Positions 48,573 through 59,462 of a stretch of 64,000 nucleotides of DNA are shown here, one piece after another. A program made the translations under genes and the position numbers. The stretch comes from Salpingoeca rosetta. Lineage: Eukaryota; Protista; Choanoflagellata. The DNA is taken from NCBI GenBank assembly GCA_033442325.1, contig JAWQFM010000007.1:997684-1061683 (forward strand). The letters run 5' to 3'. Each line of letters opens with the position of its first letter. The stretch's first letter is position 1. The notes below the pieces were generated by a model. The model was not told where the DNA came from, ran no database searches, and saw only the letters and a list, made by a program, of their open reading frames with translations.

Positions 48573-51383
48573 CTAGAGCTCGCACGAGTCCGGCCCCGCA
48601 CACGCGAGCGTGAGCTGCAAGCTGGTGCCGTCCTGGTCCTCCTTCACCTCCCGCAGGTCAATGGCGGTGATGTGGGTCATCAGCTCATCGTACGTCGCCT
48701 TGCTGCACTCCTCAAAGGGCGCCTGCTTGTACGTGTGCCCGCTGTACGGCAACACGCACAGGCCGTTGTAGGCATCACGGTTGTGCCACATCCACGCACC
48801 AACGCCATCCCACTCGTGCTCGCGGACAGAGACGGTTGTTGAGACGTTGTTGGTGTTGACGCCGCGGCGGTGGCCACCACGGATCCACGTGTCGTGCAGG
48901 CGGTGCACGCGGTCAAGCAACTGCAGCACAGGTGGTGTTGGTGATGGTGGTGGTGTGAGTTTGAAAGGGGAGAAAAGGCCACATGGGCAACATGGGCAAG
49001 GGTTTCTGTTTGCTGCTCTGCCACACCACGACAAGACAACGCACAACCACAACACACACGCACGCACACACACACACACACAACCATACACATACATGCA
49101 TCCACAACGGCACAACGCACACACATGCACGCACACTCACGTGAAGGGCGCTTTCGCTGCGCAGGGTGGCGCCTGGCGGTGCGCGCTGCGGGAACGAGAC
49201 GACGGCGGTTGTGTTTGTGCTCATGACGTCGTCCTCGATCAGCGCAGGGCAGCGCTCCAGCAGATACGGATACAGCGACTCCTGCTTGTTCACGCGCATG
49301 CGGCGGATGTAGTGCTCGGCGTGCCACGGGTGCACGCCACTGCTGGTGCCCAGCACGAGGCTCGTGGTGCCTGCAGGCTTGACGGTGGTGACGCGATCGG
49401 CGGTGCTGATGCCAATGGCCGCAGACACACGCGCGTTCTCGTCGACAGCGGCATGCGCAGCGCGGGAGAGATCAAGCCGCATCACGGCGCCGCTCGCAAT
49501 GCCTGTGCGTACGGGTGCAGGGAGAGAGAAGAGGAGAGAGAGGGGGGGGGGTTGTGACGGCAAGATTGGGTAGTAGTGTTGCGGCAGGAGGATGCCATAC
49601 AGCTGATGACGAGCTAAATGTTCAGGGCACGAGGTCACACACGCGCGCACAGAGACCAAAGGCAGAGGCAGAAGGACAGGCAGGCAGGCAGGCAGGCAGA
49701 CACGCAGGCAGAAGGACTGACAGACACGCAGGCAGACACACACACACACAGACACACACAGACACACAGACACACACACAGACAGACACACACACCGGTC
49801 ATGCCGACGCCGAGGAGGGACGAGCGGCGCGTCGTCTCCGCCCACTCCGGCCGCAGGTAGTGGAAGTCCGTGTACGAAGCCTGCAGCGTGCCGATGAAGG
49901 CTGCACACCGGGCAAGCGTGTCAAGCTCCTGCTGCGACGACACCGCGCTCACATTCATTTCCGTCAGGTTGCAGAACTGGAAGGGCTCGAGCGCAATCTC
50001 GCAGCAGGGGTTGGTGCCCCACTCCGTGGAGTTGGTGAGGTAGATGCCTGGCTCCCCGCTGTTGGACGCGCGCACGTGCTGCCACAGCTCCATAAACTGC
50101 GCCTCCGTCACGTGTGCACGGTCAAGCACGGCAGAGTTGTTGGCCATGGCGCGCTGGCTGTTGCGCTCCCACCACTCACCGCTCTTGGCTGCAGCCATGC
50201 CGGCATCCTCGGGCGAGAACAGCGAGATGAGCGCCGAGCGCCGCACGCCCCCAGACGCAACGCAGGTGGCAAGGTGGCACACAATGTCATGCACGTCCAG
50301 CGGTGACAGGCGCGTGTTGTCTGCCGCGCGTGCGAGGATGGCCTCCGAGGCCTCCAGCGCCTCCCGCAGCGGCTCGGGTCCAGGCGCCCGCCCGCCAGCA
50401 GTGATGATGGGCGACCCTTTGGGGCGGATGGCAGAGTAGTCAAACTTGACAGGCACGCGCGGCACCCCGTCATCTGGCAGGTACGTGTCGAGCAGCACGC
50501 GGGCGGCGTCGGCCCAGCCCTCAATGGAGTCGTCGATGTTGTGCACGTGTGCGTGGGTGGCGACGGTGCCGCGGTGCGGTTGGCGCACACGGGGCAGCTG
50601 GCTGATGTGCTGCTGCTGCACGGAGAAGCCAGCCCCGGTGCCGCTGAGGAGCAAGAACATGAGCTCGGAAAAGGCGCTGGTGGTGGTGATGGGCAGGAAG
50701 CTGCAGTTGAACATGCGCACGTTGTTCACGGCGACAGCACCGCCAGCAAACTGCAACGAGCGCATGGAAGGCAGCACCAGCTTGTTGTGCACCAGCTCGT
50801 AGGCCGAGATGATGTCGTCGTGGAGGTCCGGGAACTTCTGCAGGTGCATGGTCTTGTTTCGCTCCACAATCTCGCTCCACACCTCGCGCCGGGACTCGCT
50901 CGGCAGGTAGCGCGCATACTTGGAGTACACGGTGATGTCCGAGAGGATGCCGCTGCTCGTGCTCCTGCTCCGGGGATCACCGTCCTTGTCGGTGGATGTT
51001 GCCGTCTCCGTGGCAAAGCGGCGGCCTCTCGCTGGTGTGGACGGCGTGTGGCCATCTGGCACGCCCGCTGCACTTGATGTCGACACGCTACGAGCTGCTT
51101 GCCTCCACAACCGCGGCTGATGCCTGCTACTGCCCACAACAGTGCTCAAGCACGAGGCATATCGACGTTGTCGCTGTCGTTGGCGTTGCAGTGGAAGCTG
51201 CCATCGCGCAGCAGTGCTGCTGCTGTGGGTGTGGTTCCTGTGGCTGCTTGCGTCACTGCCCCAGCATACCACTTCCACTTGCACTGCCGACGCTGCTGCC
51301 ACTGACGCATGGGTGCGGTGAGCACAACCCCTGCAAGCAGCAGCAGCAACAGAGGGTGTTGTTCTTCTCGCAGCCGCAAGCAT
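48573..51383 (-). CDS. nrdJ: Class II adenosylcobalamin-dependent ribonucleotide reductase (monomeric NrdJ/RTPR type) with an N-terminal mitochondrial-type presequence
   Basis: Exons 51383-49796, 49502-49141 and 48920-48573. Motifs KYARY...RREVW, LPSMRSL, RMFNCSF, GTGAGFSV, DSIEGW, FDYSAIRPKG, GGRAPGPEPL, SGGVRRSALI, TNPCCEI, QFCNLTE, TTVKPAGTTS, YKQAPFE, and a C-terminal Cys pair LACAGPDSCEL*. Confidence 0.93.
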
Positions 51384-51645
51384 GTCGGTGCACGTTCGTC
51401 GTCGTCGTTGTTTTATGCGGTTGTTGTTGCAGTTGATTGCGCGCACTGGCTGGCTGTTGTTGTGAAGGTGGGTTGGTTGTGATGTGATTGTGACATTGGT
51501 GCTGCTGACACAATCAACAACATGCATGCATGGCAGTGTGCTGGGAGGTGAGCTTGACGTTGGATGGTCGACTGTGTGTCACACTGCTGGCTCATCCACT
51601 CGCCTCTGCCTTGCTCACTCGCCTCTGCCTGCTCGGCAGACAGGC

Positions 51646-54296
<2,651 letters not shown>

Positions 54297-54548: not shown

Positions 54549-54861
54549 NNNNNNNNNNNNNNNNNNNNNNNNNNNNNNNNNNNNNNNNNNNNNNNNNNNN
54601 NNNNNNNNNNNNNNNNNNNNNNNNNNNNNNNNNNNNNNNNNNNNNNNNNNNNNNNNNNNNNNNNNNNNNNNNNNNNNNNNNNNNNNNNNNNNNNNNNNNN
54701 NNNNNNNNNNNNNNNNNNNNNNNNNNNNNNNNNNNNNNNNNNNNNNNNNNNNNNNNNNNNNNNNNNNNNNNNNNNNNNNNNNNNNNNNNNNNNNNNNNNN
54801 NNNNNNNNNNNNNNNNNNNNNNNNNNNNNNNNNNNNNNNNNNNNNNNNNNNNNNNNNNNNN
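54549..54861. other. Assembly gap at the 3' end of the NCoR-like gene
   Basis: N run. Confidence 1.

Positions 54862-59462
<4,601 letters not shown>

What the first reader, a model, noticed from the sequence alone, without database searches (positions are those of the whole stretch)
50950..51383. Mitochondrial-type presequence on the class II RNR: possible in-organelle dNTP synthesis
Seen: a ~145-aa extension before the conserved core, starting MLAAARRTTPSVAAAACRG. It is rich in R/A/S, has few acidic residues in its first ~105 aa, and has cleavage-like motifs RRYAS and AARSVSTSS. Established: adenosylcobalamin is made and used in mitochondria (methylmalonyl-CoA mutase pathway), while mitochondrial dNTPs usually come from import and salvage. 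Inference: the enzyme was retargeted to where its cofactor is, giving mitochondria their own de novo reductase. I know of no described case.
Basis: partly seen in the sequence, partly recalled or inferred. Interest (0 to 1): 0.72.

Follow-up and report, generated by a model that had tools for sequence, protein, structure and literature searches.

The report
Mitochondrial-type leader on choanoflagellate B12 reductase
In the choanoflagellate Salpingoeca rosetta, a vitamin-B12-dependent enzyme that makes DNA building blocks carries an N-terminal leader that looks like a mitochondrial import signal, and eight related choanoflagellate genes carry one too, so these mitochondria may make their own DNA precursors; this has not been tested experimentally.

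Summary
The window comes from Salpingoeca rosetta. A three-exon minus-strand gene (48573-51383) encodes a 765-aa monomeric class II ribonucleotide reductase of the RTPR type. Homology to all prokaryotic and viral relatives starts at about residue 145.

- **Translation.** The 147 codons before the core are present, unspliced, in the mature mRNA. They follow the first AUG of the main transcript. No other in-frame AUG lies before the conserved core.
- **Character.** The stretch is predicted disordered and matches nothing else in the genome. It is Arg/Ser/Thr/Ala-rich, and its first acidic residue is at position 37.
- **Conservation.** All nine choanoflagellate-type orthologues I could read have such a leader (26-147 aa). 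It is acid-free at the tip, carries net charge +3 to +5, and has an R-x-(F/L/M/T)-(A/S/T) cleavage-like motif 10-29 residues before the core. Of 110 prokaryote and virus homologues, 108 start directly at the core. The nine form one clade with 100/100 support.
- **Genome context.** The genome also has class I RNR, and a methylmalonyl-CoA mutase with an acid-free N-terminus. I found no dNK-family deoxynucleoside kinase.
- **Against a simple "follow the cofactor" story.** A second adenosyltransferase lacks a leader but has a tail anchor, so it is probably cytosol-facing. The leader also has near-non-coding GC3.

Verdict: a mitochondrial presequence is the best reading (about 0.55). In-organelle dNTP synthesis is inferred. 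I found no published case.

The parts
50943..51383 (-). N-terminal extension, codons 1-147: the proposed mitochondrial presequence plus a Ser/Thr/Asp-rich linker
   Evidence: It has no homology to any prokaryote or virus relative. AF2 gives pLDDT 25-37 and no secondary structure for residues 1-140. No Pfam domain matches. Its only match in the genome is itself. It is present and unspliced in minus-strand mRNA.
51276..51383 (-). Acid-free, basic tip of the leader (residues 1-36), beginning MLAAARR
   Evidence: Net charge is +4 in the first 25-30 residues and the first Asp/Glu is at position 37. The maximum 10-residue Kyte-Doolittle mean is 1.5, so there is no signal-peptide core. The hydrophobic moment is 0.40, the weakest of the orthologues.
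51153..51167 (-). RRYAS (residues 73-77), a first R-3-type cleavage-like motif
   Evidence: Regex scan. It is not positionally conserved in the orthologues.
51009..51023 (-). RRFAT (residues 121-125), an R-x-Phe-Ala-Thr motif 26 residues before the core; my preferred candidate for the processing site
   Evidence: The same motif type lies 10-29 residues before the core in all nine orthologues, for example RWFAT, TRLST, RRLST and RQLST.
49796..51383 (-). Exon 1 (phase 1 at its 3' end): leader plus the N-terminal two thirds of the reductase, including the B12 insertion domain and the NPCCE thiyl-radical loop
   Evidence: It is 100% identical to P0001 over 529 aa. An RNA contig is colinear from 49850 to 51427.
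49141..49502 (-). Exon 2
   Evidence: GT..AG borders were read. Its translation is contained in P0001.
48573..48920 (-). Exon 3 with the C-terminal Cys pair (CAGPDSC) and the TAG stop
   Evidence: The three exons sum to 2298 nt, which is 765 codons plus a stop.
51384..51427 (-). 5' UTR of the main transcript, as far as the RNA contig reaches
   Evidence: Contig X6 ends at 51427 and there is no ATG in this interval.
51523..51533 (-). Cluster of three upstream ATGs (51531, 51527 in frame, 51523), upstream of the main 5' end
   Evidence: A few minus-strand-RNA reads reach up to about 51640, so a minor longer 5' form is not excluded.

Best explanation
Codons 1-147 of exon 1 are translated and act as a cleavable mitochondrial matrix-targeting presequence. 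The basic, acid-free tip would engage the TOM/TIM23 import route. The processing peptidase would cut at an R-x-Phe/Leu-Ala/Ser motif, most likely RRF|AT at residues 121-125, about 25 residues before the conserved core. The mature enzyme is a monomeric adenosylcobalamin-dependent ribonucleoside-triphosphate reductase of marine bacterial or phage ancestry. In the matrix it would reduce NTPs directly to dNTPs for mtDNA. The cytosolic class I R1/R2 enzyme would serve the nucleus.

Shown: the extension exists and is in the mRNA after the first AUG. It is disordered, it has presequence composition, and the same feature recurs in all nine orthologues of one clade. Inferred: import, cleavage, activity in the matrix, and the physiological role.
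For: 1. **Gene and enzyme.** The closest solved structure is RTPR, the PF21995 and PF02867 domains are present, and the NPCCE and FCNL catalytic cysteines and the C-terminal Cys pair are present.
2. **mRNA.** Stranded reads cover 50950-51367 with no joint on that strand. An RNA contig runs colinear to 51427. ATG 51383 is the first ATG below that end. The next in-frame Met is residue 178, inside invariant core helices.
3. **Orthologues.** Nine of nine choanoflagellate-type orthologues carry 26-147-aa leaders: S. rosetta, Barroeca, Choanoeca, S. infusionum, two Hartaetosiga species, and three environmental sequences. Their first Asp/Glu is at position 26-52, net charge is +3 to +5 in the first 25 residues, and none has a hydrophobic core. 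In 110 prokaryote/virus relatives the first acidic residue is at a median of position 3 and the median net charge is 0.
4. **Cleavage-type motif.** An R-x-(F/L/M/T)-(A/S/T) motif lies 10-29 residues before the core in all nine.
5. **Single origin.** The nine form one side of a 100/100 branch and their branching roughly follows the species tree. The trait has therefore been kept since their common ancestor although the sequence is not conserved.
6. **Not a domain or a copy.** The leader is not folded (pLDDT 25-37), matches no Pfam family, and is not copied from elsewhere in the genome.
7. **Genome context.** Class I R1 and R2 are present without leaders. MMUT has an acid-free 32-residue N-terminus. 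One MMAB-type gene has a 55-78-aa N-terminal extension. No dNK-family kinase was detected.
Against: - No targeting predictor (TargetP, MitoFates) was available, and there is no localisation or proteomic data.
- The S. rosetta leader is atypical. It is 120-147 aa long, has Pro at position 10, and has the weakest amphipathic moment of the set (0.40 against 0.49-0.69).
- Its GC3 is 0.59 against 0.82-0.87 in the rest of the gene, and codon likelihood does not prefer the annotated frame. It looks like young or weakly constrained sequence.
- S. rosetta, Microstomoeca and Barroeca have a second adenosyltransferase with no presequence and a C-terminal tail anchor. This implies adenosylcobalamin is made on a cytosolic membrane face. 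The only other known eukaryotic user of that cofactor is this reductase.
- A few minus-strand reads lie upstream of the in-frame uATG at 51527.
- Algal class II RNRs are described as cytosolic, with no consistent targeting prediction (bioRxiv 10.1101/2023.06.07.544158).
Confidence: 0.55

Rival explanations
1. The extension is translated but is only a disordered, Ser/Thr/Arg-rich tail, for example a regulatory, phosphorylated or degradation-controlling tail. The enzyme works in the cytosol, supplied with adenosylcobalamin by the tail-anchored, cytosol-facing adenosyltransferase paralogue. There it would serve as an iron- and oxygen-independent back-up to class I RNR.
For: A tail-anchored adenosyltransferase without a presequence exists in S. 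rosetta and two relatives. The leader is disordered and has near-non-coding GC3. Its amphipathicity is weak in S. rosetta. Class II RNR is described as cytosolic in algae. Its role in Dictyostelium is called enigmatic, with no localisation claim (PMC3605638).
Against: Generic disordered tails are not systematically free of acidic residues at their tip. Here nine of nine orthologues are, and all keep an Arg-containing cleavage-type motif at a similar distance from the core. In four species the leader is only 26-34 aa, a typical presequence length and short for a regulatory tail. Microstomoeca has the tail-anchored enzyme but no reductase turned up in the search, so the two are not strictly coupled.
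Confidence: 0.2
2. Dual localisation. The leader is a weak or inefficient presequence, so part of the enzyme is imported and part stays cytosolic. In the Choanoeca-type orthologues a second AUG exactly at the start of the core could give a leaderless cytosolic form.
For: A Met directly precedes the LSD(L/I)TV core start in C. flexa, P0126, L020 and L019, where other species have Ile or Leu. Both a matrix-type and a cytosol-facing adenosyltransferase candidate exist. The S. rosetta tip is only weakly amphipathic.
Against: S. rosetta, Barroeca, S. infusionum and both Hartaetosiga species have no such internal Met. There is no evidence for two protein forms.
Confidence: 0.15
3. The extension is not translated. 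It is 5' UTR that happens to be open, and the annotated start is wrong: initiation would be at a non-AUG codon near the core, or most transcripts would start inside the stretch.
For: GC3 and codon usage look non-coding. An open frame of this length arises by chance in 1-6% of shuffles. RNA depth falls steadily from about 51050 towards 51383.
Against: ATG 51383 is the first AUG of the RNA contig and is in frame with the core. There is no other in-frame AUG before residue 178. Every orthologue, including complete transcriptome ORFs, has an in-frame Met-initiated leader of the same character. A falling 5' depth is expected for fragment libraries.
Confidence: 0.07

Closest known systems
Lactobacillus leichmannii ribonucleoside-triphosphate reductase (RTPR, PDB 1l1l) and its marine bacterial and phage relatives
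   Same: Monomeric class II architecture, B12 insertion domain, NPC(G/C)E thiyl-radical loop, second active-site Cys and C-terminal Cys pair. Identity to marine prokaryote/virus homologues is 55-58%.
   Different: Those proteins start 2-11 residues before the core. The choanoflagellate genes have introns and a 26-147-aa basic leader.
Other eukaryotic class II RNRs (Euglena gracilis, Dictyostelium discoideum, Phytophthora, early-diverging fungi, some algae)
   Same: A B12-dependent reductase of bacterial origin sits next to a class I enzyme in a eukaryote. Its role is described as enigmatic (PMC3019208, PMC3605638, PMC8085122).
   Different: None of the papers I read assigns these enzymes to mitochondria, and the algal survey calls them cytosolic. 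I did not examine their N-termini myself.
Mitochondrial adenosylcobalamin enzymes MMUT and MMAB
   Same: Nuclear-encoded AdoCbl-related proteins with N-terminal extensions. S. rosetta MMUT has an acid-free 32-residue N-terminus before the conserved core.
   Different: They are ancestral mitochondrial proteins, whereas the reductase is a horizontally acquired enzyme that would have gained its leader secondarily. The S. rosetta MMAB-like gene on contig 18 has an ambiguous 5' model.
Accepted supply routes for mitochondrial dNTPs (cytosolic class I RNR including p53R2, carrier import, TK2/DGUOK salvage)
   Same: They address the same need, dNTPs for mtDNA (review PMC12493167).
   Different: In that scheme no reductase sits in the matrix. 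Here the reductase itself would be imported, and no dNK-family salvage kinase was detected in the genome.
Bacterial-type RNase J with a mitochondrial-type presequence in the same genome (earlier scan note s1-436017)
   Same: Another prokaryote-type enzyme in S. rosetta with an N-terminal mitochondrial-looking leader.
   Different: It is an unrelated enzyme, and I did not re-examine it.

Membership tests
Class II (adenosylcobalamin-dependent) ribonucleotide reductase, monomeric RTPR type | Sequence homology to RTPR and the RNR barrel | tested here: met
   The only PDB match at the default threshold (E <= 0.001) is 1l1l, at E 1.3e-19. PF02867 scores 25.2 bits against a cut-off of 23.9 on exon 1.
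Class II (adenosylcobalamin-dependent) ribonucleotide reductase, monomeric RTPR type | B12-dependent RNR insertion domain | tested here: met
   PF21995 scores 30 bits against a cut-off of 27, at residues 324-397 of the ORF.
Class II (adenosylcobalamin-dependent) ribonucleotide reductase, monomeric RTPR type | Thiyl-radical Cys in the NPC-x-E loop, and the nearby redox Cys (RTPR C408 and C419) | tested here: met
   GTNPCCEIAL...QFCNL aligns to RTPR GTNPCGEISL...EPCNL. C460, E462 and C471 are invariant in 23 sequences.
Class II (adenosylcobalamin-dependent) ribonucleotide reductase, monomeric RTPR type | C-terminal Cys pair that receives electrons from thioredoxin | tested here: met
   C757 and C763 are invariant. 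The S. rosetta sequence reads CAGPDSC.
Class II (adenosylcobalamin-dependent) ribonucleotide reductase, monomeric RTPR type | AdoCbl-dependent NTP reduction activity | not testable with these tools
   This needs an enzyme assay.
Mitochondrial matrix-targeting presequence | N-terminal position, absent from non-organellar homologues | tested here: met
   The extension is 147 aa in S. rosetta and 26-77 aa in eight orthologues. Of 110 prokaryote/virus homologues, 108 lack one.
Mitochondrial matrix-targeting presequence | Rich in Arg, Ser/Thr and Ala, nearly free of Asp/Glu, with net positive charge | tested here: met
   In S. rosetta Arg is 13.6% against 7.1% in the mature part, Asp+Glu is 4.8% against 11.3%, and Ser+Thr is 25% against 15.5%. 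The first acidic residue is at position 26-52 in all nine orthologues.
Mitochondrial matrix-targeting presequence | Potential amphipathic helix at the tip | tested here: inconclusive
   The maximum 11-residue hydrophobic moment is 0.40 in S. rosetta and 0.49-0.69 in the orthologues. I had no calibrated threshold or control set, and AF2 predicts no helix.
Mitochondrial matrix-targeting presequence | R-2/R-3 type processing motif | tested here: met
   RRYA is at residue 73 and RRFA at residue 121 in S. rosetta. An R-x-(F/L/M/T)-(A/S/T) motif lies 10-29 residues before the core in nine of nine orthologues. The motif is short, and its chance frequency was not calibrated.
Mitochondrial matrix-targeting presequence | No signal-peptide or transmembrane hydrophobic core | tested here: met
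   The maximum 10-residue Kyte-Doolittle mean in the first 40 residues is 0.7-1.7 in seven database orthologues.
Mitochondrial matrix-targeting presequence | Positive call by a trained predictor (TargetP, MitoFates, DeepLoc) | not testable with these tools
Mitochondrial matrix-targeting presequence | Directs import and is cleaved in vivo | not testable with these tools
   This needs reporter fusion, organelle proteomics or N-terminomics.

The most novel reading that the evidence does not exclude
Craspedid choanoflagellates import a horizontally acquired, B12-dependent ribonucleoside-triphosphate reductase into the mitochondrial matrix. Their mitochondria would then make dNTPs de novo from NTPs, independently of the cytosolic iron- and oxygen-dependent class I enzyme and of deoxynucleoside salvage. 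That would be the first organelle-resident ribonucleotide reductase pathway. It would tie mtDNA maintenance in the closest living relatives of animals to bacterial vitamin B12.
Probability: 0.4. Interest if true: 0.82.

Novelty: new variant of a known kind. Interest (0 to 1): 0.66.

Why it matters
Textbook and current reviews place ribonucleotide reduction in the cytosol. They supply mitochondria by import and salvage (PMC12493167). The role of class II RNR in eukaryotes that also have class I is openly called enigmatic (PMC3605638). A matrix-resident, hydroxyurea-insensitive, B12-dependent reductase would give that enzyme a role. It would be a new solution to organelle dNTP supply, and it would link mtDNA copy number to prey-derived B12. 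S. rosetta can be transfected and edited (my own knowledge), so localisation and knockout tests are feasible. The work also shows a horizontally acquired gene gaining a targeting leader that has been kept in character, but not in sequence, across a whole clade.

Tried and rejected
- **Folded regulatory domain (for example an ATP-cone).** Rejected. No Pfam match and pLDDT 25-37.
- **Signal peptide or N-terminal membrane anchor.** Rejected. There is no hydrophobic core.
- **PTS2 peroxisomal signal.** I checked by eye for R-[LVI]-x5-[HQ]-[LA] and found no match. No tool was run for this.
- **Leader copied from another gene or a repeat.** Rejected. The only match in the genome is the leader itself.
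- **A 5' intron that removes the stretch.** Rejected. There is no joint on that strand, and a colinear RNA contig exists.
- **The contig-18 MMAB-like gene as a clean mitochondrial control.** Withdrawn. I read a start at MFGRTL followed by a His-rich spacer. The database model (P0249) starts further upstream at MDDGRL and splices that part out. The GC3 figure I computed for that extension is therefore not a valid control.
- **GC3 controls.** The remaining controls show only mild drops: MMUT 0.70 against 0.75, and the L019 orthologue 0.60 against 0.75. The strong drop in S. rosetta (0.59 against 0.87) stays unexplained.
- **N-termini of class II RNRs from other eukaryotic groups.** Not examined. 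They fell outside the best 120 hits, and I had no referenced query for them.
- **Joining exons.** Searches used exon 1 by reference. Full-length work used the database protein P0001, whose length equals the three exons (2298 nt).
- **Large representative-protein search.** Not used, because nothing in the claim rests on absence of relatives.
Full report
**What is there**

The window is from the choanoflagellate Salpingoeca rosetta. Exon 1 of the gene is 100% identical to the database protein 'ribonucleoside-triphosphate reductase [Salpingoeca rosetta]' (P0001, 765 aa).

The gene lies on the minus strand and has three exons with GT..AG introns: 51383-49796, 49502-49141 and 48920-48573. Together they make 2298 nt, which is 765 codons plus a stop. 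Searches used exon 1 by reference, and full-length work used the stored protein P0001.

The closest solved structure is the monomeric adenosylcobalamin enzyme of Lactobacillus leichmannii (1l1l, E 1.3e-19). The B12 insertion domain (PF21995) and the RNR barrel (PF02867) score above their cut-offs. The NPCCE thiyl-radical loop, the FCNL cysteine and the C-terminal Cys pair are all present.

**The observation**

Homology to RTPR begins at residue 145, equal to RTPR residue 24. They have these properties:
- 13.6% Arg, 25% Ser+Thr and 16% Ala.
- Only 7 acidic residues, the first at position 37.
- The motifs RRYAS, AARSVSTSS and RRFAT.
- No Pfam domain.
- AlphaFold2 pLDDT of 25-37 with no secondary structure for residues 1-140, while the core from about residue 141 folds confidently.
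- No other copy in the 55-Mb genome.

**Is it translated?**

Three stranded RNA-seq runs cover the stretch on the correct strand and show no splice joint there. An RNA contig from a fourth run is colinear from 49850 to 51427.

ATG 51383 is the first ATG below that 5' end. The next in-frame Met is residue 178, inside helices whose residues are invariant across 23 homologues.

Three points count against confident translation:
- An in-frame ATG at 51527, with out-of-frame ATGs at 51531, 51523 and 51496, lies upstream. A few minus-strand-RNA reads reach up to about 51640, so a minor longer 5' form cannot be excluded.
- A 146-codon open frame arises by chance in 1-6% of shuffles.
- The stretch has GC3 of 0.59 against 0.82-0.87 in the rest of the gene, and it shows no codon-usage preference for its frame. 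It behaves like young or weakly constrained sequence.

**Comparative evidence**

This is the strongest evidence. The nearest relatives are choanoflagellate proteins from Barroeca monosierra, Choanoeca flexa, Salpingoeca infusionum, Hartaetosiga gracilis and H. balthica, plus three environmental sequences.

For two environmental contigs a prokaryote-style gene call had started at an internal Met. Reading the DNA upstream shows in-frame Met-initiated leaders there too (L019 and L020).

All nine proteins share the following:
- An N-terminal extension of 26-147 aa.
- The first acidic residue at position 26-52.
- Net charge of +3 to +5 in the first 25 residues.
- No hydrophobic core.
- An R-x-(F/L/M/T)-(A/S/T) motif 10-29 residues before the core, for example RRFAT, RWFAT, TRLST, RRLST and RQLST.

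The 110 prokaryote and virus homologues differ. In 108 of them the protein starts 2-11 residues before the core. Their first acidic residue is at a median of position 3, and their median net charge is 0.

In a maximum-likelihood tree the seven full-length choanoflagellate sequences form one side of a 100/100 branch, with Hartaetosiga splitting first. The leader has therefore been kept in character, though not in sequence or length, since the common ancestor of these lineages. That is how targeting peptides evolve. Choanoflagellates have no plastid, so a basic, acid-free, non-hydrophobic leader points to mitochondria.

**Genome context**

S. rosetta also has a class I reductase: R1 on contig 2 and R2 on contig 7. 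R2 starts acidic (first Asp/Glu at position 4), and R1 starts directly with its conserved N-terminus. Class II is therefore an additional enzyme, free to specialise.

Methylmalonyl-CoA mutase is present, with an acid-free 32-residue N-terminus before its conserved core. No dNK-family (TK2/DGUOK-type) kinase was detected. That search works exon by exon, so absence is not proven.

**Evidence that cuts the other way**

There are two adenosyltransferase genes (PF01923).
- The contig-18 gene (PTSG_12477, P0249) has a 55-aa N-terminal extension in the database model. I read an alternative 78-aa form in the DNA, so its 5' end is ambiguous.
- The contig-2 gene (PTSG_11014, P0127) has only 17 residues before the conserved core. 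It lies 260 bp from a divergent MRPL13-like gene, and its best PDB match is human MMAB.
- The contig-2 protein ends in a 19-residue hydrophobic segment (Kyte-Doolittle mean 2.7) followed by a short basic tail. Its orthologues in Microstomoeca roanoka and Barroeca monosierra end the same way.

That is the signature of a tail-anchored protein whose catalytic domain faces the cytosol. If so, adenosylcobalamin is also made outside the matrix, and the only other known eukaryotic user of the cofactor is this reductase. It keeps a cytosolic or dual location alive.

**Literature**

Class II RNRs are known from Euglena, Dictyostelium, Trichomonas, Monosiga, Phytophthora, early-diverging fungi and some algae (PMC3019208, PMC8085122, 10.1101/2023.06.07.544158).
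- In Dictyostelium the enzyme's role is called enigmatic (PMC3605638).
- The algal survey states that RNR II is cytosolic and found no consistent targeting prediction.
- A 2025 review of mitochondrial nucleotide supply has no matrix reductase (PMC12493167).

Four searches found no description of a mitochondrion-targeted class II RNR.

**Verdict**

The best reading is a cleavable mitochondrial presequence on a horizontally acquired RTPR-type reductase, conserved across craspedid choanoflagellates (confidence about 0.55). The rivals are a cytosolic enzyme with a non-targeting tail (0.2), dual localisation (0.15) and a wrong start (0.07). Import, cleavage and in-organelle dNTP synthesis are inferences, and no trained predictor or experiment was available.

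Another reports a bacterial-type RNase J with a similar leader elsewhere in this genome (s1-436017).

Noticed in passing
G000:C2:146270-147700 (+); loci L007 and L009; protein P0127 (PTSG_11014): This is a second MMAB-like adenosyltransferase. It has no N-terminal presequence but has a C-terminal hydrophobic segment plus a basic tail, which looks like a tail anchor. The ending is conserved in Microstomoeca roanoka (P0128) and Barroeca monosierra (P0130). The enzyme is probably cytosol-facing, possibly on the mitochondrial outer membrane. I know of no described tail-anchored MMAB.
   Followed up: partly
G000:C18:64788-66000 (-); loci L008 and L011; protein P0249 (PTSG_12477): The 5' gene model of this MMAB-type adenosyltransferase is ambiguous. 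The database model starts MDDGRL and splices out a stretch. Read through, that stretch gives a Met-initiated basic leader followed by a long His/Arg run and then KRFSS, just before the conserved core.
   Followed up: partly
window 51370-51880 (+): The divergent neighbour gene (ATG at 51646) has a non-coding first exon that overlaps the reductase's 5' end head-to-head. It also has a 5' UTR intron with two alternative donors (51465 or 51545, joined to 51638). Its next donor is at 51878. No Pfam family matched its first coding exon.
   Followed up: partly
window 51437-51643 (-): Low-level minus-strand-RNA reads lie upstream of the main 5' end, and in two of three runs they are not contiguous with the gene body. 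They could be a minor long 5' UTR that includes upstream ATGs (51531, 51527 in frame, 51523, 51496), or promoter-associated antisense RNA.
   Followed up: no
whole genome G000: No match to the deoxynucleoside kinase family PF01712 (TK2/DGUOK/dCK type) was found in the S. rosetta assembly. The search works exon by exon, so absence is not proven.
   Followed up: no
P0004, P0126, L019:206-226, L020:639-660: In the Choanoeca-type and two environmental orthologues a Met sits exactly at the start of the conserved core, where other species have Ile or Leu. This is a possible second initiation site giving a leaderless form.
   Followed up: no
window 50943-51383 (-): GC3 of the leader is 0.59, against 0.82-0.87 in the rest of the same gene. 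The closest orthologue (L019) shows a milder drop, 0.60 against 0.75. I have no explanation, though it may reflect recent recruitment of non-coding sequence.
   Followed up: partly
window 50579: G>A appears in 4 of 20 reads of one RNA run only (X21). It is probably a strain or culture variant.
   Followed up: no
window about 52500-53500 and 54560-54870: Two assembly gaps (runs of N) are flanked by long dinucleotide and trinucleotide microsatellites. Introns and UTRs across the region are full of (GT)n and (CA)n.
   Followed up: no
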